From Adineta vaga (lineage: Eukaryota > Animalia > Rotifera), in assembly GCA_021613535.1 (NCBI GenBank), contig CP075495.1, positions 13,144,001-13,208,000 on the forward strand: 64,000 nucleotides of DNA, in the 5' to 3' direction. The notes under the pieces were generated by a model. It saw only the letters and a list, made by a program, of their open reading frames with translations, was not told where the DNA came from and searched no databases. Position 1 is the stretch's first letter. Every line of letters starts with the position of its first letter. Of this stretch, positions 1 to 12,100 are shown piece after piece. Made by a program: the position numbers and the translations under genes.

Positions 1-2778
1 ATTCATTTTTCTGAGAAATTATCAGATTGCCAATCATATCAATAATTTCAGACAACGATCGTAGCTCCCAATTTGTTTGGTTTTTAAAAACATGGTTCAT
101 TGATTCAATATCATTATTATAAAAAAGTCGGGGAGCACCGCTTTTATCGAGAAAATTAATGGGCAGACGAACTGCAGCTATCAGATGATTCCGAAAAACA
201 TTTGTTTGATATTGGTTGAACCATTGTAGGAAGTCGGTAGCACCATTAAATCGAGCTTGATCACGGCGCTGAAGATTTCGCCAATATTCATCTAATGCGT
301 TTAATCTATCCTGGAATTCTTCTTCGGTCTCAGATTGTATCAAAGATTCAGACGAATTAAACATAAGATCAAGCATATCTTGCCGTTCCTCAAGGGTAAC
401 ACGGGACTTTATTAATTGTCTTTCAATATTTTGGCGTACATGTCGTGTACAATAAAGGTGAGTTGAATTCGGAAAGATCGTATCGATTGCTTTTTTGACA
501 GCTTTGGCTCCATCACTCCCAATCACAAGTTTACTACAATCACCCAGTTCCCGATTCACAAAACTTAAAAGTTCTTCAAATGATTCAGCATCATCACGAT
601 AGTGAATCATTGTTGGACCAATAAAAATCGGTGTTTTCTTTGTTTTTCGATATTGAACAGCTGTATTCCGAAAAGCAATTGATGTCACATAAAATCGACC
701 AAGATTAAAGGTCGTATCAACACCTGCTTGGAGTAAAAAATATTTAATTATTCAAAAGCTTAACAAAACTTACATAGAACGGATGGTTGGGCTTCTTCTG
801 AAGAAACAATACAACATCGTTTCAATTCTTTAATCATATATGGTTGAGACAATATCAAGACTGGTGCTTCGCCTCGACTCATTGCAAAACGAGCAACCAT
901 GCTATTAGATTTCTCCAAATTTCTCATAATTGTCAAGTATTCATCAACATTTGATTCATTGTTCTTGCGAGCGTTATATACTTGATTACGGTCCCGAACT
1001 GTCATTATTGATGGGTAAGGAAGTTGCTCAACATTTTTTATGGATTCATTATATATGGTTGATGGTTTCACAAATCGTGGCTGAGACTATTTAGAAGAGA
1101 AAAGTTCTGTATTGTCATCCATATTTATTTATTTTGAACTTACTTTGATCTGATTCAGAACGGAAGGTAAAGTAGCAGTATATGGACGATCTGATTTTTT
1201 TGCATTTCCATGTGGTTTCAAACGAACATTGTCCGTATTCTTTTGGTTTTCTTCGACATATTGTAAAAATATAGGAAGATTAGATTTGGTAGATTCATTT
1301 TTGCTCGGTAGTTGACTCGTATAAGCAATCATACGACGAAATGAGGAATTTGTAGCATTTACAGCATAATATCTATTTGTTAAAATTCGAAATATGGTTG
1401 TACCGCAAATGCAGAAATATTCTACCTACCGGTGCAATACAATAACTTGTTTTGGATCTATTGAACATGATACATATTTACTACCAACTCTTTCATTATA
1501 GTATGGTTTACCATTTGCATCCAGACGTATAATTTGATAGTTGTTTGTATCTCTTTCCATAAACATTGTTTTGACAGACCTAATTTGAATCCATACTCCA
1601 TTGCCGTCTTTTCCGATCGATAAATGGTTTTCTTCTGTTCGCTTTACAAAATACATAGATGTATGTCCAACCATCCGTGGTGGTTGTTCAAATTCCGTTC
1701 CATTTTTAACAGTATCAAGCATGTTCTTAATAATTGTAGATGCTTCAAGAAATATCTGCCTTGTAGCAAATTCAGAGAGGGAACTTTTCGGTTCATTGAT
1801 ATCTTCTTCCTCCTCTTCTGTTTGGATTGAATAAGTTATTTTCGATCTACTCGGGCGACAAGTGGTTTCCGATGAAATATCGGTATGTTCAAAATACGTT
1901 ATGTCTTTATTCACGCTCTCAAATCCATTATTAGTTTCGACTAAAGGCTTTGATTGATGAGTAAAGAGTACTGGTGTAAAGTGATTAGGACGCCACATTT
2001 GATTTGTGTTTACATATGGACCAGACCACATTACACGAAGTGGTGTTTCAGATGCTGCTATCAGTTTGTTTCTAGGTATAAAAACCGTGTTTAGCAGTCG
2101 AGAATATTCATCGTTTTCATTGACACTAGGATATATCGACTCTATAGAGTGACCAGTTACCGTTGACAAAGCTGCAAGTGTTAATACACCAGTGTATTGT
2201 TGATTATTCATGATGCGCAAGACGTGATCTTGAACAGATTCGTCATCAACGAGATCGAGACCCATATTAGTTTTTATAGTCTCGTAATATTGTGAGTGTG
2301 TGCACAACTCATCTATACAACGAGCACGAAGCTCATCTATAGTGGTGGCTGGATAAAATACTTGAAATGTGTGAAATAGACAATCACCATCGCCAGCCAC
2401 GTCGACTGGAACCATTTCTGCAGTAGAGCACTCTGTATGGTTTTGAAGAAGTTCTTCGGTGTGTTCATCAACAGAATGTATATTTTTATCGAAAAACTGC
2501 ACAGGTACATCAGGTATCGTATAGCAGTTGATAGCATCATGCATATCAATACATTTAGCCTGTAATACTACATAATCGTGACTTTCATCTTTTAATCTTG
2601 TTAAAAATAGAAGATAAAAGTCATCACGGGTTTCACGTTTGCAATTATCACATAGTACAGAGTTGGATCGTAAATCACACAACGCACAAGTTGTTCTACA
2701 AACTTCTTGTAATAAAAACATCATTCTTGTTAACGTCTGGATATTATTAGTGGTTAATATAAAAAGAATCGATTTCAT
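1..2778 (-). CDS. MULE transposase fused to an N-terminal Cys4 knuckle, a vertnin-like OTU cysteine protease and a CG-1-like DNA-binding module (3' end truncated by the window)
   Basis: Four exons (2778-1430, 1372-1144, 1086-774, 723-<1) join in frame across GT-AG introns 1429-1373, 1143-1087 and 773-724. The last exon gives CVDTTFNLG (D1), VIGSDGAKA (D2), LYCTRH (CxxH) and YNNDIESMNH (E). OTU motifs are AGDGDCLF and PNHFTPVL. The CG-1-like motif is KDGNGVW...LHRYYA...FRRMI. Confidence 0.9.
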
Positions 2779-2826
2779 TTCGCTTACTTTTTTCTTATCA
2801 TTTCTTTTTGGGACGTGACTTCCAAA

Positions 2827-2853
2827 CGCTTTTCAAAACTAGTATGAAAAGCG
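2827..2853. promoter_or_regulatory. Dyad-symmetric element in the divergent promoter between transposase and ATPase
   Basis: CGCTTTTCA (2827-2835) and TGAAAAGCG (2845-2853) are perfect 9-bp inverted repeats around a spacer containing ACTAGT. The element lies midway between the two start codons. Confidence 0.5.
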
Positions 2854-2902
2854 ATGCATCTTCTTTTTATCTATCTGTATTCGATATTGTTACGTGCTGA
2901 TC

Positions 2903-4076
2903 ATGGTTACTTCTACATCGAAACGAGTAGTGATAGAAACATCTCTTTATTACAACGAAGAAATGGTGAATTATGCAGCGATTAATCCTCATGATGATAT
3001 GTTTTCACAAGCTAAACAAGTAGAAGTTTTCACGAAATATGGAGTGGTCAAATTTGTTGTTATTATAAATCCATCTGTTACAATCGGTGCAATTGCGTTG
3101 AATCGTTTTCAACGTAAAAAATATCATATGAAGATGTATCGTAGTTATGTTGTACGTTCGTATTCTCCAGCATCACCAACTCGTACATTTTTCGAAATAA
3201 TAAATGAAAAGTTCAATCTCAACGATAAAATTGGTGGAATGCAAAAGGTGCTGGAAGAAATTTTTGGTAATGTGTTACTTCCTCGTCTTTACCCACAAAG
3301 CTTTATTGCAAAAACAGATATAAACAAAACACGAGGTATTGCTTTTACACGGTAATTCGGGTGTTGGAAAAAGCTTGATAGCGAGAACTGTATGTGATGC
3401 ATTAAATGTTATTCCGAAAGTTATACGTGGTCCTGAAATTCTTTCATGTATGCTTGGTGAATCGGAAAAAAATATTCGAGATCTATTTGAAGATGCGCGT
3501 AGCGATCAACAATCCTATGGTTCGAATAGTAGATTACACGTGATTATCTTTGACGAAATGGATGCTATAGGTAAAAATCGAACAGGTAGTAATTCAGTAC
3601 GCGATACCGTTCATGATAGTATTACTGCTCAATTATTGGCTGAAATTGATGGCATGGCTTATCTTAATAATATTCTCATAATTGGTACGACCAATATTTT
3701 AGAAGCCATTGACCCCGCACTTCTCCGTCCTGGGCGAATAGAAACCGTGATTAAGGTTGATTTGCCTGATGCACGTGCTCGTTCAGCTATTTTCGATCTC
3801 CACATGAAGGCACTTCTTCGTAATGGAGCTCTCTATCGAGATGTAGATGTCAACAGTATCATCCATGGCACAGAAGGCTTGACCGGTGCTCATATAGAAA
3901 GAATTATTCGTCTGGCAATTCATGCTGCTATGCGACGAGATATACTACATAGAAATACATTCGACGTTACCGATGAACAAGCAGAGGAACTTCAGGTTCG
4001 TAACGACGATTTCATTGAGACATTAACAAAAGTCCAACAAGATCAGTCAACATGCCAAAATAATGAACAACCATAA
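2903..4076 (+). CDS. Intronless truncated NSF/Sec18-like AAA+ ATPase (N-terminal beta-barrel subdomain plus D1 only), with a +1 frameshift near 3341
   Basis: ORFs 2894-3355 and 3339-4076 join as RGILLHGNSGVGKS if one base is removed. NSF D1 hallmarks: PKVIRGPEIL, GESEKNIRDLFEDA, SRLHVIIFDEMDAI, LLAEIDGM..LNNILIIGTTN, ALLRPGRIE, AEELQVRNDDF. The N-terminus NYAAINPHD...PSVTIGAIALNRFQRK resembles the first NSF-N subdomain. First ATG is at 2903. Confidence 0.85.
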
Positions 4077-4728
4077 ATTTCTACTACGTATATATTACAA
4101 TTATTAATACATTCGTACTTTGCATTTACGTTTCCTCTATATTCAGTTGCCGCGAACAAACTCATTTAAAAACACACAGATTGTTGTTTCTTTCAAAAAA
4201 AAATCTCTTGAATAATTTTTGGAATTTAGAATAGAAATCACTGATTTATATCAAAGATTAACGTAATAGATGGATATGTATGATCGTAGTTGAAAGTCTG
4301 CCTAGATTGATAAGTATTGTATGTGGTGGTTATATTTAGTTGTCTTCAATGGTTAGCTGTGAATAGCAACAGTTGGGATTATCAAAGAATATGCACTATG
4401 GAAAATAGTTGCATGTTTTATGAATGAGATAGCTTATAAATATGGCAGTAGTCGTATAAATATAAATACAATTTCCAATAAGATCATATATATATATATA
4501 TTGCAGTTATCCTTATGATAAAGACTTTTCCATGATGCTCAACATGAGCATATGCTTTTGTAGTATTCATCAAAGCTTGAGTTATAGATCATTGGACCAC
4601 CAGAAGATCAAATCTTGGTTTGGTAGAACACTTTTACAATCGAACGTGATAGTACAAAAATTTGAGCGCATTTTCTTAATTTGAGATATTTTCTTTACAT
4701 TGGAAAATAGTGTTTGGAAAAAATAATA

Positions 4729-5018
4729 GATAAAAGCTATTCAGAGGTATCTCATATTTACATCAAAAGATAGCTTTCCGCATTCTGTGGGTGTTAGTGG
4801 GGACTCGCAACAGTGGTTGTCTTGACTGCAAGCGAGATTTTGGGTGATAGTAGATATTTACATGCAAGTTTTTCACGATATTTCATGTTTTTCGGGAACA
4901 TTTCAGGGATAAAAGTCTTTTATGGATACCACTATTTTATACCAAAAGATAGCTTTTCACATTCTGTGGGTGTTAGTGGGGACCATCAACGTCCGCTCTC
5001 ACAAAGTTGGGTGATAGT
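4729..5018. repeat. Two-copy imperfect direct repeat (period 179 nt), probable transposon subterminal repeat
   Basis: The 41-nt core CAAAAGATAGCTTT(C/T)C(G/A)CATTCTGTGGGTGTTAGTGGGGAC occurs at 4764-4804 and 4943-4983 with 2 mismatches. Flanking shared words are GATAAAAG (4729, 4908) and TGGGTGATAGT (4841, 5008). Confidence 0.85.
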
Positions 5019-5116
5019 GGTGATAGCATAGAATACTAATACCCTTCTGTTTCTCATGATGATAATGATTTCATAGTTGTTATTTTCATGAAAGCAATAC
5101 CTAACCCAACATAACT

Positions 5117-6174: not shown

Positions 6175-6616
6175 TCCGTACCTCCAGGATCGACTTAGTT
6201 TTTATGGAATGTATTTTTATATCAACTTCTTGTCAGTGACATAGAGTATCTACCTAGAAACTTCAATGCATTCAAAAAATAGCTTTTTTTTATCTTTAAA
6301 AGAAATTTATGAGTTCGCAAATAAAAGATTTTAAAGAATAGTTCTAGACAATAAACATCAAAAAGATAATATGAAGTACACAGAGCAACGGGTGAGATTG
6401 TGACAGTGTAGGATCAAAATAGATTGGAATTTTCCAAGGAAAGAGAATATAAAAGACTAACCATTCAAATAAATTCTCTACTACTTTTCGTTTATCTCGT
6501 TTTTTCTCACTTATCATATATAATTACTTACCGTGTGTATTCAAATTTAGATATCTAAAGAACAGACTCTACAAATAAGTATAGCTCTTCCATACGCATC
6601 TTACAATAGTTATAGC

Positions 6617-7405
6617 TTGTCAGAAGACAACGCCGATGAACAAATTCACAATTTTGCATCTGAACTTATAAATAGTGATCAACCAATTCGAGAACTAGGC
6701 CCTGTTCGAGAACTTATAAATACTCATGAAAATTTGCAAACTAGTTTACAAACAATGGCTGATAGTAATCCGTTAATACAAAGAATTAATAATCAGTCAG
6801 CAGCTAATATTAATACTGTTATTGATAGTGTCGATTCTCTAAGAAGTTTAAGTAAAATATGTAGATCTCTTGAAAAAGAAACTTTATCACAAGAAGCTGT
6901 TGAAGTAATCAATACACAAGGTGGAAACGTGGTTAATAATCTGTTGAATATTTGTTCAAGAACTACAGATGAAATCCATAAAAATACAATTGTACTACAA
7001 AGAGCTATAACAGAAAATGAAAGAACAACAAATGATCCACTAACCAATGAACTACTACAACAACAGCTTCAAATTACAACAAATATTTCATATGATCCTC
7101 TACAAGCCACACAACAAATAACTGAAGCAATGACAATTAGCAATAAAATAAAAAATCGTATCGAAGAACTAGAACCAAATATAACTGCTTTTGTACGAAG
7201 AGCGGCACAAAACAATTCTCTATATATGAAATATGCCGCTGGTGTCTTCTGCTTGGCTACAGCTGTCATAGTTGCGTGTGCTGCAGGGCCATACTTAACT
7301 CCAATTGTTATTGGTGCATTGAAAAATGTACCTGCAACTACCAGTAGTGGAAGTATTGCCTTATCATCACTGCTTACTGTTATGGTGAAAACTAAGCGAA
7401 AATAA
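6617..7405 (+). CDS. Orphan helical/coiled-coil protein with C-terminal hydrophobic segments
   Basis: 262-codon open frame in AT-rich DNA. It is amphipathic and Q/N/E-rich, followed by YAAGVFCLATAVIVACAAGPYLTPIVIGAL and GSIALSSLLTVMV-KTKRK. The frame opens at TTG and the first ATG is at 6755. A TATA-like TATAAAAG lies near 6448. Confidence 0.7.
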   Translation: MSEDNADEQIHNFASELINSDQPIRELGPVRELINTHENLQTSLQTMADSNPLIQRINNQSAANINTVIDSVDSLRSLSKICRSLEKETLSQEAVEVINTQGGNVVNNLLNICSRTTDEIHKNTIVLQRAITENERTTNDPLTNELLQQQLQITTNISYDPLQATQQITEAMTISNKIKNRIEELEPNITAFVRRAAQNNSLYMKYAAGVFCLATAVIVACAAGPYLTPIVIGALKNVPATTSSGSIALSSLLTVMVKTKRK

Positions 7406-8029: not shown

Positions 8030-8744
8030 ATGCAAGGTTATACATTCGTATTTTTGATTCTTTCGATAACATTAATTGATGGACTTTTTTTTAGTTGTAA
8101 GTTATTCTTGAATGAAATTATTTTTTTGAAAATTTTCTTTTTCTCTTTCAGCTAAACCAAAATGTCCAATCAAACATTATAAATCAAGCAAATATATTAC
8201 TGGAGATCAACTTTTAGTTCATGAAGATTTCTATGAACGTGTGAAAGCTTTAGAAACAGTTGCAAAGGAATGTAAAGTCCATATTTATGTCAAAGGATCA
8301 TACTATCAATTACCAAATCCTGCTCAACAAGTCTTGGTATCTGATGCAGATCTAGTTATTGGTCATGGTTTTCAATTCGAAGTTCGAAATGAAAATAATG
8401 CACTTCTATGCAATAAATTATGTCTTTCGAAAAGTATTGTTGAATTTTGACATCCTTTCCCTATTTTGTCTAATCTCATTCTTTCAGATCCAATGGATAT
8501 GGCTGAAGTGAAATGCTTATTACAAGGTGTAGCCAATCGTGGTTTAACATGGTCTCGTTATTATTCCGATGTTATTAGTGACGGCACTTATGCATCGAAT
8601 ACATATGGATATCAAACATTGAAAACGGATATTCAAACACGATGTGAAAAAGAGAAATTTAAACGACAACTTCTTCGAACACTTCGTCGAATGTATGATG
8701 AAGAACAAGATCAAGATTCTGATGATGAAAAAAAGAAGAAATAG
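8030..8744 (+). CDS. Secreted protein, probable degenerate M15 (Hedgehog/DD-peptidase fold) peptidase homologue
   Basis: Three exons (8030-8096, 8152-8433, 8488-8744) splice in frame. Signal peptide MQGYTFVFLILSITLIDG. Motif order VHEDF..CKVHIYVKGSY..IGHGFQFE..CNKLCL..VKCLL..GLTW. The gene model is firm but the family call is tentative. Confidence 0.7.
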
Positions 8745-9117
8745 AATTCTTTTTAACAATACAGACTCATATTTCTCTTAAAGCTTTTTTTAAACTCATA
8801 CATTTTATTTTTACTTATTCTTCTTTAGATGATTTCGAGAATATATTAAATAAGATATAGAAAATAGTTGTTTTTTTCTCTCAATATATATGAGTCGATG
8901 GAACTCAGTCACTTGTTTATTTTATTGATAAAAAAAAACATTGTTTTACATGTCAAATCTCTGCTTAGCAAAAGAAAAGATCTTTGATCATCATATCAAT
9001 CGGTAACTGGAAATCCACTGACATATTTGTGCAGAAGTGTGATAAAAGAAGAAAAAACTGTGTGAAACACAAATATCAGATCTAAGTTATAAAATAAAAG
9101 AAAAACTATTCAATTCT

Positions 9118-12100
9118 TCATTCTACATGGAATAAAATCAATAATGTTTGTCGAATTTTTGTTAATTCATCTATATTCTGTTCCCAATCTGTTTCTGTTA
9201 ATAAATTCATCACTTGTTCCGAATGTTCTTCGTCATTTACATTGGAAAATAATTCATCATTAAACATAATACATGTATCATATAAATTTTGTGCTGCTTG
9301 TCGTCTCACCCACGGATAATTATGTAAGAAGAAGTTTGTTAAACACTTCAATATAAGATTTCTTAATGTTTGATTATTAAATTGTAATAATGAACAATAT
9401 AATTTGATAAAATGTGTATATAAAGCTGGATTATTATTCAATGTTTGATTCTTTTTGATTAAAATATCTTCTAATAGTTCAATAAAATTGATCCAATATT
9501 GAAGAAATTCTTTGGGATAATGTTCATAGAAATATTCAAATGTGGATTGAGATAAAAGTCGTTCCCATGCTTGGATTGATGGTATAAGAATTCTTATTTG
9601 ATGATTTTGTTTATTTGTAAGAAGTTTTTCTACATCTTGAAAAAGTAAATGAATCAAATGATGATTAGTTTTCTGAAGAATTAAAAATGAATGTAAAGCT
9701 TGACTGGCATGGGATAATTCTCCAGCTGTTATTAAACAATTCATCCAAATTGTGTAACGATAACGATCAAAGATTAATAATTGAACAAGTAATGGAAAAA
9801 CACTTTGCGAATTACGCCAATCGATATCATTCGATTGAAGAAAGATTCTTTCAAGTTCAATTTTGGAATCAATCGGTTGTTCGAATGAAATATTCAAAAA
9901 TTCAATCAATGCTGTTCCACTAATCATTCTCAAATCATCAATTTTTGAGCAAACATTTGTTAGAATTGCATTCAAACAATTGTGAAGCATAGTGGATGTT
10001 AAAAATTGTTTATTATGTTCATTGATTAATTTCAATAAACGAACTAATTGTGTACAAGCTGTTTCACGTACAAGACGACCTGAATCTCCGTAACGATCAT
10101 TTGTATAATCACGTGTACAACGAAGATATGAAGTAATTAATTTATTAATTGATTCTTGTGTTGAAAATGGTGATAAGGAATGTAAATGAAGATTTTCATA
10201 GAGATTACAAAGAGCAATCAATGTATCTTTACGTTGTTTTATTAAATGTTGTGTTGATTTTGTAATTATGATTAAATTAAATAAACAATCAAGAATTTTT
10301 GTTATACTATTACTTGTTAGAATCATTTTCGATGGAAATGATGCGAGAGCAAGTGCATAACCTTGTCGAATATATTCTTGAGATGTTGTTGTTATTTTAT
10401 TTAAATAACGATCAAGAATTTCAGATGAACTGAAAGAAAGAAAGAAAGAAAGATGAAATAGTTGATTTTTGTCGAATAAAAATACCTTGATTTAGAATAG
10501 AATGCATTTGAAAAAGCTTTCAAAGCATTTAATGCTGCTTGTCTAACATCATCATCTAAATTACTAATACATTCATCGAGAATGGTTTGCCAACATTGAA
10601 TTGTTTCATTTGGAAAACATTTTTCTTTTTCATTCAATGAAAAATATTCCATCGAACGTGAAATATTTTCAATAAATAAACAGAGTGATGGTCGAATAAG
10701 ATCACCTGAATATCCATCAAGAAATCCTAAATTTTTATAATCAATCAACAGACTGGATATTTTCTTTTGTAAAGTAACTTGGAAGTCTTCTAAATTTGAA
10801 CATTCATTTGGATTCTATGAGAAAAATAAACAAAGAATAAGAGAATTAGTGTTGTTTGTTTTTCTTTAACATACGCGTTGATAACGTTGATATAATCCAT
10901 AGATAATATGTCCACAGCTAGCAAGAAGACCATGTCTTGCAATACCATCACTTTTTCTATCTAAACATCGATCAAATAATGGCAACAGAATCTTTTCATA
11001 GATTTCTTCGATTGTTCCATAATCTATTGTTGTTTTTTCTAATAATTGACTTGTTAATAAACGTGTTTCTTTTTTCCAATGTATTATTTTATATTTTAAT
11101 AAATGTTCAATCATATAACGTCCAAAAATATCATAATATTTGATCAATGAATGTGCTAAGATTAAAAAACAATAATCAAATTTACCAATTAGATTATAAT
11201 CCGTTTGTTGTATAATATCAATTCCATGAGGAAAATATTCTCCTTGTCGACCAACATTTTCTTGTAAAGAAGCTGATGCTGCTCGACGACATTGAACATT
11301 CCAATCGAAACAAATTATACAAAGTAACATACCAGCTAAATCAGCTGTATATGAACGAAAATCAATGGGATCAAAAGCACGAGCAAATGACCAACAAACC
11401 TTCAAGAAAGAAATATTTGTTGTTATGTTTGTTTTGGGAAATTGAAATGAAAATTCAAACTTACATAACAAGCAGCATCACGCACAATATGTCCATAGGT
11501 TTGATGACCCAGTTTTTCATCATAATTCAATGATTTATGTACAATAGGCATAACAGAATCTAAACGTTCAGGTAAAAGAAGACCACGACGTGCAAGTTCA
11601 GCTAATGCTAAACATCCACCTTGTAAAGCATAATGATCACAGGCAAGAAGTGCAACTGTGGAAATACGATCACATAAGAGCGAAACTAATTGAGCAGCAT
11701 ACGATTTTCTTAAACGATTTGTAATACGACCTAGACCTTTTGCTGATGACCATCGAACATATAATTCTTTATCACTTAAACCAGTCATGAGTAATTGAAG
11801 TATAGATTCTACCAATGTTGGTACATTACTATTATCTTCAAGATCTTCTTGTTCATCATTTTCATACTGTTCATGATGATGTCCATTAGTTGTTGATGAA
11901 GATTTACTAAAGAAGAAAGAAATCAATTTTATTGTTGATAAAAAAAATGTATAACTTACATATTCATAGTTGTTGTACTAGTTGATGGATTATTCTTTTT
12001 TGATGTTAATGAATCAAGAATATTTCGAACACCACGACGATATCTCCATGCTGCACCATGTTTAGGCATTGGTAATAGAGTCATCGCAAGTTTTTGTAAT

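What the first reader, a model, noticed from the sequence alone, without database searches (positions are those of the whole stretch)
1..5044. MULE transposon apparently carrying its own NSF-derived AAA+ ATPase in a head-to-head two-gene module
Seen: an intact spliced MULE transposase (minus strand) and an intronless NSF-like ATPase (plus strand) start only about 125 nt apart. The ATPase lies between the transposase and the subterminal repeats, so it appears to be inside the element. Known: prokaryotic DDE systems use AAA+ partners (MuB, TnsC and IstB for targeting; ClpX to dismantle the MuA transpososome), and NSF is a complex-disassembly machine. Eukaryotic MULEs are known to carry host fragments and proteases, but I do not know of a dedicated classic-clade AAA partner. 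Inference: this may be a transposon family that domesticated NSF, for example to remodel the transpososome or host silencing complexes, alongside its OTU protease.
Basis: partly seen in the sequence, partly recalled or inferred. Interest (0 to 1): 0.85.

Follow-up and report, generated by a model that had tools for sequence, protein, structure and literature searches.

The report
Rotifer MULE transposon with own NSF-like ATPase
This is a complete 6.5-kb cut-and-paste (Mutator-like) transposon of the bdelloid rotifer Adineta vaga that carries, next to its transposase, a shortened copy of the cell's NSF protein-unfolding motor; the same gene pair is kept under selection in related elements across bdelloid rotifers, an accessory gene I found no report of in eukaryotic DNA transposons.

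Summary
The window begins inside a 6,503-bp MULE of Adineta vaga (G000:C2:13142542-13149044, which is window -1458 to 5044). It has matching termini (GGGTATTAGTATTCTATGC...), 800-bp inverted arms at 99.6% identity, subterminal repeats and a perfect 9-bp target-site duplication (TTCTGTTTC).

Two genes lie inside, with starts 124 bp apart. One is an intact five-exon OTU-MULE transposase on the minus strand. The other is an intronless ATPase of about 390 codons on the plus strand. The ATPase consists of an NSF-type N-terminal double-psi barrel plus an NSF-D1-like AAA domain. It has no Nc subdomain and no D2 domain.

The same head-to-head pair, between inverted repeats, recurs in A. ricciae, A. 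steineri, two Rotaria species and unnamed assemblies. One of those elements (L033) has 930-bp TIRs and its own 9-bp duplication. The link also holds when starting from divergent transposases.

- The element ATPases form one clade beside NSF D1, apart from the host NSF.
- dN/dS is 0.07-0.18, similar to the transposase.

Passive capture is therefore rejected. The A. vaga copy has a one-base frame change just before the Walker A motif, which I could not check with reads. What the ATPase acts on is inference. The finding is a new variant of a known kind.

The parts
1..726 (-). Transposase exon 4 (part inside the window): MULE DDE core with DTTF, SDG, CTRH and IESMN motifs. The exon continues left of the window to about G000:C2:13143945. 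Exon 5 is at about C2:13143687-13143860.
   Evidence: PF10551 E=1.9e-8; PF00872 E=6.7e-4; collinear with A. ricciae and other copies
774..1086 (-). Transposase exon 3
   Evidence: open frame with GT-AG borders read from the sequence; 59-77% aa identity to the same exon in 6 other elements
1144..1372 (-). Transposase exon 2
   Evidence: 57-nt GT-AG introns on both sides
1430..2778 (-). Transposase exon 1: N-terminal CxxC...CxxC zinc-finger-like motif, OTU-like cysteine protease (DGDCLFH ... NHF) and a conserved C-terminal block (SIGKDGNG...YNERVG)
   Evidence: OTU PF02338 E=0.016 here and 0.0011 in A. ricciae, both below Pfam's cutoff; alignment A4: catalytic Cys and His motifs invariant in 5 elements
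2779..2902 (.). 124-bp divergent intergenic region between the two start codons (presumed bidirectional promoter)
   Evidence: the two genes' starts lie about 150-220 bp apart (370 bp between the called genes in Rotaria sp. Silwood2) in the other elements
2903..3340 (+). ATPase, first reading frame: NSF-type N-terminal double-psi beta-barrel (about residues 5-86), plus the linker and first helices of the AAA domain
   Evidence: The fold was tested on the A. ricciae orthologue: model pLDDT 81, best match NSF N domain 1qdn_A Z 12.2, Foldseek E 1e-5
3341..3341 (+). Position of the frame change. Relative to the family reading RGILLHG, the A. vaga sequence has one base too many here, directly before the Walker A motif.
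   Evidence: The NCBI model P0001 bridges it with an intron that removes the Walker A. All 13 other aligned family members read through.
3342..4076 (+). ATPase, second reading frame: NSF-D1-like AAA domain and lid (Walker A GNSGVGKS, pore loop CMLG, Walker B IIFDE, sensor-1 TTN, arginine fingers RPGR), ending in the stop codon
   Evidence: (PF00004 E=1.8e-30; AAA_lid_3)
4186..4983 (.). Right arm of the long inverted repeat (99.6% identical to C2:13142770-13143569)
4716..4990 (.). Subterminal direct repeats (179-bp period) holding the motif TGTGGGTGTTAGTGGGGAC. There are two copies on the right arm and three on the left. They are candidate transposase-binding sites.
4984..5044 (.). Right terminus of the element (...GCATAGAATACTAATACCC), mirror of the left terminus at C2:13142542
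   Evidence: (first 80 bp of the terminal alignment, 77 identical)
5045..5053 (.). Right copy of the 9-bp target-site duplication TTCTGTTTC (the left copy is at C2:13142533-13142541)

Best explanation
A full-length, recently inserted Mutator-like (MULE) cut-and-paste transposon of Adineta vaga. It belongs to a MULE family found, in these searches, only in bdelloid rotifers and in unnamed assemblies. The standard gene set of the family is two divergently transcribed genes:

- an OTU-protease-fused DDE transposase;
- a protein of about 380 aa derived from NSF, made of the N-terminal double-psi barrel and the D1 AAA motor only.

Shown here:
- the element's boundaries and target-site duplication;
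- the ATPase lies inside those boundaries;
- the pair recurs across the family;
- the ATPases form one clade next to NSF D1 and apart from host NSF;
- the ATPase is under purifying selection, and most copies keep the catalytic and pore-loop motifs.

Inferred:
- The protein works as an ATP-driven, ring-forming protein remodeller for the element. The most likely job (about 40%) is acting on the transposase or transpososome, for example releasing the very stable post-integration complex, as host ClpX does for phage Mu. The retained N barrel would be the substrate or adaptor handle.
- A role against host chromatin or silencing proteins, possibly together with the OTU deubiquitinase, is the next option.

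In the reference A. vaga copy the ATPase frame is broken just before the Walker A motif. That copy probably no longer makes an active ATPase, although its transposase is intact.
For: Boundaries:
- The termini match, and 800-bp arms are 99.6% identical.
- A 9-bp TSD, TTCTGTTTC, flanks the element.
- An 854-bp non-autonomous derivative with the same termini and its own 9-bp TSD lies on another chromosome.

Transposase:
- MULE domain above the Pfam cutoff.
- Five open exons, collinear with other copies.

ATPase origin:
- NSF D1 is the best single-domain PDB hit.
- The family HMM scores NSF D1 at 282-294 bits and Cdc48 domains at 150-186 bits.
- The N-terminal model matches the NSF N domain (Z 12.2; Foldseek E 1e-5).
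- In the tree, the element ATPases form one clade (SH-aLRT 98). NSF plus element ATPases are separated from Cdc48 (100). The host NSF exons sit within NSF.

Recurrence:
- The same pair is found in A. ricciae, A. steineri, Rotaria sp. Silwood1 and Silwood2, and ENA assemblies.
- The L033 element is 6,246 bp with 930-bp TIRs, GGGTATT termini and the TSD AAAGTTACA. A second copy sits at another locus in L032.
- Reciprocal test: transposase homologues 40-47% identical also have an AAA gene of 384-387 aa head-to-head.

Selection:
- dN/dS is 0.07-0.18 for the AAA part and 0.15-0.31 for the N part.
- The transposase gives 0.05-0.12 for the MULE exon and 0.20-0.26 for the OTU exon.
- Walker A and B, sensor-1, the arginine fingers and a hydrophobic or aromatic pore loop are kept in most copies.

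Co-inheritance:
- Pairwise distances of the ATPase and the transposase correlate (r=0.94; Mantel 52 of 5,040 permutations), and the two trees are broadly alike.
Against:
- The A. vaga ATPase has a frame change at about 3341 and an unusual Walker A motif (GNSGVGKS).
- Several other copies have degenerate motifs (P0013, P0015, P0129, L048).
- Two family ATPases (L036, L037) have no transposase nearby.
- dS is mostly saturated (1-3), so the dN/dS values are rough.
- Several 'independent' loci come from assemblies of the same species. L020 and L021 share about 800 bp of flank and are probably one locus.
- NSF needs D2 to form hexamers, and this protein has no D2.
- The interaction test between transposase exon 1 and the ATPase gave no answer.
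- Nothing here shows what the ATPase acts on.
Confidence: 0.85

Rival explanations
1. The ATPase serves the element by acting on host proteins rather than on the transposase. It would be an anti-silencing or chromatin-extraction factor, working with the transposase's OTU deubiquitinase in the manner of Cdc48/p97 with Otu1. This would parallel the anti-silencing VANC protein of Arabidopsis VANDAL MULEs.
For: - The element couples an OTU-like protease with invariant catalytic Cys and His motifs to an N-D1 ATPase of the NSF/Cdc48 type.
- Additional MULE ORFs with anti-silencing function are known (vanC, reviewed in PMC6446971).
Against: - The ATPase is closer to NSF D1 than to Cdc48.
- It lacks the Nc subdomain. 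In p97, by general knowledge, Nc forms half of the cleft that binds UBX and UBX-like domains.
- OTU scores below Pfam's cutoff.
- There is no interaction evidence (one search gave no answer).
Confidence: 0.25
2. The ATPase is a target-selection or target-immunity regulator that binds DNA and recruits the transposase, like MuB, TnsC or IstB in prokaryotic DDE systems.
For: - The genetic logic is analogous: a DDE transposase with a co-inherited P-loop ATPase in one element.
Against: - The protein belongs to the classic AAA clade (NSF D1), with a pore loop and double arginine fingers typical of protein translocases.
- Pfam gave only AAA, AAA_lid_3 and generic P-loop hits, and no IstB-type family.
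- No DNA-binding domain was detected in the N part, which is an adaptor-binding barrel.
Confidence: 0.08
3. Passive cargo: a host NSF fragment captured once, Pack-MULE style, and carried along without function.
For: - The A. vaga copy is frameshifted, and some copies have degenerate motifs.
- MULEs are known to capture host sequence (PMC6431247; PMC6446971).
Against: - Full-length open frames persist in many lineages that are 47-75% identical.
- dN/dS is 0.07-0.18, and the catalytic residues are invariant.
- The gene is present across the sampled diversity of the family, including subfamilies whose transposases share only 40% identity.
- It is only 45-46% identical to host NSF, whereas host NSF is 68-71% identical to another NSF.
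Confidence: 0.03
4. This is not a mobile unit. It is a domesticated transposase next to a host ATPase gene, or an assembly artefact.
For: - The full-length element is single-copy in this genome.
Against: - Intact TIRs and perfect 9-bp TSDs are seen in A. vaga and in an independent element, L033.
- A second copy lies at a different locus (L032).
- A MITE-like derivative lies elsewhere in A. vaga.
- Low copy number is usual for bdelloid DNA transposons (PMC7943196).
Confidence: 0.02

Closest known systems
Two-gene MULEs: maize MuDR (mudrA + mudrB), yeast Mutyl (mutB), Arabidopsis Hiun/VANDAL (vanA + vanB/vanC)
   Same: - Mutator-superfamily DDE transposase.
- Long TIRs of several hundred bp, with subterminal repeats.
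- 9-bp TSD.
- An additional element-encoded ORF that the family keeps.
   Different: - The accessory gene here is a recognisable enzyme, an NSF-D1-type AAA ATPase with an NSF-type N barrel. The review of MULE diversity I read (PMC6446971) lists mudrB, mutB, vanB and vanC, but no ATPase and no rotifer elements.
- The transposase is fused to an OTU-like protease.
NSF / Sec18 (vesicle-fusing ATPase)
   Same: - D1 is the closest AAA domain by sequence, profile and tree.
- The N-terminal 86 residues fold as the NSF/p97-type double-psi beta-barrel.
- Walker A and B, sensor-1, the arginine fingers and the DGM motif are conserved.
   Different: - There is no Nc subdomain and no D2 (hexamerisation) domain, so the protein is about 380 aa rather than about 745 aa.
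- The pore-loop residue is M, F or Y rather than the NSF tyrosine.
- The gene has no introns, whereas host NSF has introns inside D1.
- It is 45-46% identical to host NSF and lies in a separate clade.
- It is encoded inside a transposon.
Phage Mu MuA with host ClpX (transpososome disassembly), and the transposon-encoded ATPases MuB, TnsC and IstB
   Same: - A DDE transposition system that depends on a P-loop or AAA+ partner. ClpX is a ring unfoldase that remodels the strand-transfer complex.
- MuB, TnsC and IstB are encoded by the element itself.
   Different: - ClpX is a host protein of another AAA+ clade.
- MuB, TnsC and IstB are DNA-binding regulators of other AAA+ clades.
- Here a classic-clade eukaryotic unfoldase is element-encoded. 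Functional equivalence is only a hypothesis.
Cdc48/p97 with the OTU deubiquitinase Otu1/YOD1
   Same: - An N-D1-type AAA motor and an OTU-family protease occur in one functional unit.
- The N barrel of the element ATPase superposes on p97 N domains, including those solved with OTU1 UBXL (4kdi, 4kdl).
   Different: - The ATPase is nearer to NSF than to Cdc48.
- It lacks the Nc half of the cofactor-binding cleft.
- The OTU domain is fused to a transposase.
- No binding has been shown.
Pack-MULEs and KI-MULEs (MULEs carrying host gene fragments or ULP-like proteases)
   Same: - MULE elements containing sequence of host origin.
   Different: - Here the host-derived gene is complete and under purifying selection.
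- It sits in autonomous elements, and the whole family shares it.

Membership tests
Mutator-like element (MULE / MuDR superfamily) | DDE transposase with the MULE catalytic domain | tested here: met
   PF10551 E=1.9e-8 (35.1 bits, cutoff 27.6). PF00872 E=6.7e-4 (19.1 bits, below its 21-bit cutoff here; 24.8 bits, above it, in the A. ricciae copy). The D (DTTF), D (SDG), CxxH (CTRH) and E (IESMN) motifs are visible in the translation.
Mutator-like element (MULE / MuDR superfamily) | Terminal inverted repeats, typically long (up to hundreds of bp) | tested here: met
   Matching termini plus 800-bp arms at 99.6% identity. L033 has 930-bp TIRs at 99.6% identity.
Mutator-like element (MULE / MuDR superfamily) | Target-site duplication of 8-11 bp | tested here: met
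   Perfect 9-bp TSDs: TTCTGTTTC, AAAGTTACA in L033 and CAAAAAATA at the 854-bp derivative.
NSF (vesicle-fusing ATPase) orthologue | D1 AAA domain of NSF type | tested here: met
   One-stretch hits to NSF residues 209-488 at 229-230 bits. The family HMM scores NSF D1 at 282-294 bits and Cdc48 domains at 150-186 bits. The NSF plus element clade has support 100.
NSF (vesicle-fusing ATPase) orthologue | Complete N domain (Nn barrel plus Nc subdomain) | tested here: not met
   Only the double-psi barrel (residues 5-86) is present. The D1 helices start at about residue 96 in the full model.
NSF (vesicle-fusing ATPase) orthologue | Second AAA domain (D2) that holds the hexamer together | tested here: not met
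   The proteins end after the D1 lid at 375-386 aa.
NSF (vesicle-fusing ATPase) orthologue | Groups with the host's own NSF | tested here: not met
   Host NSF exons (C2:13679266-13679622 and C5:6336957-6337319) fall within the NSF clade. The element ATPases form a separate clade (98) and are 45-46% identical to host NSF.
Pack-MULE-type passive gene capture | Captured sequence is a fragment evolving without constraint, usually in non-autonomous elements | tested here: not met
   The gene is full-length, dN/dS is 0.07-0.18 and the catalytic motifs are conserved, and it sits in elements with an intact transposase.
Transposition AAA+ regulators (MuB / TnsC / IstB) | Membership of those AAA+ families, or a DNA-binding ATPase architecture | tested here: not met
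   Pfam reports AAA (PF00004) and AAA_lid_3, and no IstB-type hit. The nearest relatives are NSF and Cdc48.
OTU cysteine protease (domain in the transposase) | OTU profile match with catalytic Cys and His | tested here: inconclusive
   PF02338 E=0.016 (A. vaga) and 0.0011 (A. ricciae), both below the gathering cutoff. The DGDCLFH and NHF motifs are invariant in 5 elements. Precomputed OTU hits exist on several homologues.

The most novel reading that the evidence does not exclude
The element encodes its own protein-extraction machine. The NSF-derived N-D1 motor, possibly with the OTU deubiquitinase fused to the transposase, would pull apart the post-integration transpososome or strip ubiquitin-marked host factors from it. 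That would make this MULE family a eukaryotic, self-contained counterpart of the Mu/ClpX step. I found no earlier report of a classic-clade AAA unfoldase serving as a dedicated transposition cofactor of a eukaryotic DNA transposon.
Probability: 0.3. Interest if true: 0.85.

Novelty: new variant of a known kind. Interest (0 to 1): 0.72.

Why it matters
Eukaryotic cut-and-paste transposons are usually described as a single transposase gene between inverted repeats. How their very stable post-integration complexes are taken apart is largely unknown, and the job is assumed to fall to host factors.

A MULE family that has kept an NSF-derived unfolding motor under selection through deep divergence (transposases down to 40% identity, in at least three bdelloid genera) suggests that ATP-driven protein remodelling is a rate-limiting step worth encoding. 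It also gives a compact two-gene system in which to test this.

The family is a clear case of a core membrane-traffic ATPase being cut down (no Nc, no D2) and reused by a selfish element. It shows that automatic annotation currently labels these transposon genes as 'vesicle-fusing ATPase'.

If the pair proves to be an efficient transposition module, it could interest people who build transposon tools.

Tried and rejected
- **Sequencing runs.** There is therefore no read-level check of the frame change at about 3341 and no RNA evidence for divergent transcripts.
- **Complex prediction.** Complex prediction of A. ricciae transposase exon 1 (442 aa) with its ATPase (380 aa) returned 'no answer' (score 0.00). 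This is not evidence either way.
- **Empty site.** Searches of the own genome with 1 kb of each flank found only the locus itself.
- **A. ricciae loci.** L020 and L021 looked like two insertion sites. They share about 800 bp beyond the TIR and are probably one locus in two assemblies, so I did not count them as independent. The TSDs of L020, L023 and L024 could not be read because assembly gaps, an N or contig ends sit at the termini.
- **YN00.** dN/dS by YN00 failed for most pairs because synonymous sites are saturated. NG86 values are reported as rough.
- **Exon-1 distances.** The exon-1 distance column was spoiled by a frame error in one of my coordinates, and I ignored it.
- **Literature.** Six searches and four papers read in part found no description of a MULE, or any eukaryotic DNA transposon, with an NSF-like AAA gene. 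Repbase could not be consulted.
- **Joined sequences.** Every search used single exons or pieces by reference. Host NSF entered the tree as single-exon rows.

Full report
**Organism and place.** The window is G000:C2:13144001-13208000 of a 100.8-Mb, six-contig genome. The protein database names the locus product 'hypothetical protein I4U23_009852 [Adineta vaga]'. The host is therefore the bdelloid rotifer Adineta vaga.

**The observation.** ORF listing and six-frame translation show a minus-strand gene.
- Its first exon (2778-1430) carries a CxxC...CxxC motif and an OTU-like protease motif (DGDCLFH ... NHF).
- Later exons (1372-1144, 1086-774, and 726 leftwards) are separated by GT-AG introns of 47-57 nt, read directly.
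- Exon 4 holds the MULE domain (PF10551 E=1.9e-8, above its cutoff; PF00872 E=6.7e-4, below its cutoff), with the DTTF, SDG, CTRH and IESMN motifs.
- Exon 4 runs off the window. With the leftward sequence fetched as L010, exon 4 ends at about C2:13143945, and a fifth exon lies at about C2:13143687-13143860. All five exons are open.

On the plus strand, an intronless ATPase gene starts at ATG 2903, 124 nt from the transposase ATG, and stops at 4076. It has Pfam AAA (E=1.8e-30) and AAA_lid_3.

**Element boundaries.** Self-comparison of the extended region shows three things.
- An 800-bp inverted repeat at 99.6% identity (C2:13142770-13143569 against window 4983-4186).
- 179-bp subterminal direct repeats carrying GTCCCCACTAACACCCACA, three copies on the left and two on the right.
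- Matching termini that begin GGGTATTAGTATTCTATGC, at C2:13142542 and at window 5044.

Both ends are flanked by TTCTGTTTC, a perfect 9-bp target-site duplication. The element is 6,503 bp, and both genes lie inside it.

The full-length element is single-copy in this genome. An 854-bp derivative with the same termini and its own 9-bp duplication (CAAAAAATA) lies at C1:460238-461091. A lone MULE-exon fragment lies at C1:11146678-11147216.

**What the ATPase is.** Against PDB sequences, the AAA part matches NSF D1 in one stretch (188-189 bits for the A. vaga piece; 229-230 bits for the intact A. ricciae protein, residues 97-375 against NSF 209-488). p97 ranks first only because two of its domains are summed, at 96 and 117 bits.

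A family HMM scores NSF D1 domains at 282-294 bits and Cdc48 domains at 150-186 bits.

The first 100 residues have no Pfam hit. An AlphaFold model built from the family alignment (pLDDT 81) is a double-psi beta-barrel. Its best match is the NSF N domain (1qdn_A: Z 12.2, rmsd 2.9 Å over 93 residues; Foldseek E 1e-5, TM 0.67-0.72), followed by the Cdc48/p97, Sec18 and Pex1 N domains.

The full-length model (pLDDT 85) goes from this barrel (residues 5-86) straight into the D1 helices. The Nc subdomain is missing, and the protein ends after the D1 lid, so D2 is missing too.

**One defect in the A. vaga copy.** The family reads ...KTRGILLHGPPGTGKT... In A. vaga the reading frame changes after RGI, with one base too many at about 3341. 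The upstream frame then stops at 3353-3355, and the Walker A motif (GNSGVGKS) lies in the other frame. The NCBI model (P0001) bridges this with an intron that deletes the Walker A. I could not check the base with reads.

**Recurrence.** A search with the AAA piece found a family of proteins of about 375-386 aa, 54-72% identical. They occur in Rotaria sp. Silwood1 and Silwood2, R. sordida, R. magnacalcarata, A. ricciae, A. steineri and unnamed ENA, JGI and Logan contigs. More distant members occur in Didymodactylos carnosus.

Genomic contexts, checked by tBLASTn with each A. vaga exon, show the same five-exon transposase head-to-head with the ATPase in each of these:
- A. ricciae;
- A. steineri;
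- all seven Rotaria sp. Silwood1 contigs;
- Rotaria sp. Silwood2;
- two contigs of assembly ERZ26165376;
- by called genes, the divergent P0030 contig.

Inverted repeats enclose both genes in four elements:

| Element | Left repeat | Right repeat | Notes |
|---|---|---|---|
| L020 | 6188-6343 | 11352-11507 | |
| L023 | 6666-6733 | 11197-11264 | |
| L034 | 2871-3280 | 8581-8982 | |
| L033 | 3846-4775 | 9162-10091 | 99.6% identical |

The L033 element is 6,246 bp. It begins GGGTATTTGTAATTTATGC and is flanked by the 9-bp duplication AAAGTTACA. L032 is a second copy at another locus, with an unrelated 5.4-kb insertion in its transposase.

For the reciprocal test, a search with transposase exon 1 found only 24 proteins. 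All are from Rotaria species or unnamed assemblies. The two divergent ones I looked up (47% and 40% identity) both have an AAA gene of 384-387 aa, 160-180 bp upstream and head-to-head. L048 also has enclosing inverted repeats.

There are exceptions. One D. carnosus locus is decayed (L035). Two ATPases (L036, L037) have no transposase in the few kilobases available.

**Origin and selection.** In a tree of AAA domains:
- the element ATPases form one clade (SH-aLRT 98);
- NSF D1 sequences, including single-exon pieces of both host NSF genes, form the sister group (82);
- the two groups together are separated from Cdc48 D1 and D2 (100).

The host NSF genes lie at C2:13678324-13680195 and C5:6336608-6338251. 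They have introns inside D1 and are 68-71% identical to another NSF. The element ATPase is 45-46% identical to them. This is therefore an old acquisition, not a recent capture of the host gene.

Pairwise NG86 dN/dS:

| Region | dN/dS |
|---|---|
| ATPase, AAA part | 0.07-0.18 |
| ATPase, N part | 0.15-0.31 |
| Transposase, MULE exon | 0.05-0.12 |
| Transposase, OTU exon | 0.20-0.26 |

dS is about 1-3, which is saturated, so these values are rough.

Walker A and B, sensor-1, the arginine fingers, the DGM motif and a hydrophobic or aromatic pore loop (M, F or Y) are kept in most copies. A minority of copies are degenerate, as expected for a transposon family.

Distances between ATPases and between transposases correlate across seven elements (r=0.94; Mantel 52 of 5,040), and the two trees are broadly alike. 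This fits inheritance as one unit. The element tree does not follow the host tree: the A. ricciae element is nearer to the Rotaria sp. Silwood2 element than to the A. vaga one.

**How it probably works.**
- Shown: the element is a two-gene MULE, and its second gene is a selected, NSF-derived N-barrel plus D1 motor.
- Inferred from what is known of NSF, p97 and other classic-clade AAA proteins: it forms ATP-dependent rings and remodels or threads a protein substrate recruited through the N barrel.
- The most economical substrate is the element's own transposase complex, as with ClpX and MuA. I give this about 40%.
- Action on host chromatin or silencing factors, perhaps with the OTU protease, gets about 25%.
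- A MuB/TnsC-like DNA-targeting role is unlikely, given the clade and the lack of any DNA-binding domain.
- The complex prediction gave no answer.

**Novelty.** The review of MULE diversity lists mudrB, mutB, vanB and vanC as the known extra ORFs, and includes no rotifer elements (PMC6446971). The giant-transposon review and the bdelloid TE survey do not mention such an element. Other searches found nothing. I could not consult Repbase. I therefore class this as a new variant of a known kind.

**Limits.**
- There are no read or RNA data.
- Exons and the two ATPase frames were never joined. All searches were run on single pieces by reference.
- The taxonomic identity of the ENA, JGI and Logan contigs is unknown.

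Noticed in passing
G000:C1:460238-461091 (L005:1501-2354): An 854-bp non-autonomous (MITE-like) derivative with the same termini as the element (GGGTATTAGTATTTTATGC...) and a perfect 9-bp TSD, CAAAAAATA. It is evidence that the family has moved within A. vaga.
   Followed up: partly
G000:C1:11146678-11147216 (L003): A lone fragment matching transposase exon 4 (71% DNA identity, 68% aa identity), with no other exons and no ATPase nearby. It is a relic of a related subfamily.
   Followed up: partly
window 3340-3400 (NCBI model I4U23_009852, P0001): The public gene model bridges the frame change with an intron that removes GILLHGNSGVGKSLI, which is the Walker A motif. Homologues in other rotifers are annotated as 'vesicle-fusing ATPase' although they are transposon genes.
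   Followed up: yes
G000:C2:13678324-13680195 (-) and C5:6336608-6338251 (+): These are the two host NSF genes (ohnologues), with introns inside D1. One lies only about 530 kb from the element on the same chromosome, which is probably coincidence.
   Followed up: partly
L032:706-6072 and 10091-10286: A second copy of the L033-type element carries an unrelated insertion of about 5.4 kb in transposase exon 3 and a duplicated 196-bp terminus.
   Followed up: partly
L036:908-2062 (P0272 cluster, 8 members in several metagenomes) and L037:1024-2058 (Didymodactylos carnosus): Family ATPases with no transposase detectable in the flanks available. L036 sits next to a Ras gene, has an intact Walker A (GPSGTGKT) and an odd pore loop. 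They could be decay products or a domesticated copy.
   Followed up: partly
L048:5664-6818: A divergent subfamily in the same assembly as L033. The gene pair and TIRs are conserved and the ATPase frame is open, but the Walker A (GPSDAEKT) and one arginine finger (RPGQ) are degenerate.
   Followed up: partly
L020 / L034 compared with the window: The A. ricciae element is closer to the Rotaria sp. Silwood2 element (dS 0.85-0.97) than to the A. vaga element (dS 1.4-2.2). The element tree does not follow the host tree, which points to old parallel lineages or transfer between bdelloids.
   Followed up: no
window 6617-7405 (+): A 262-aa ORF just right of the element, with a long polar, Q/N-rich region and a C-terminal hydrophobic segment (tail-anchor-like). 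Its only Pfam hit is a weak DUF6880 match (E=8.8e-4).
   Followed up: no
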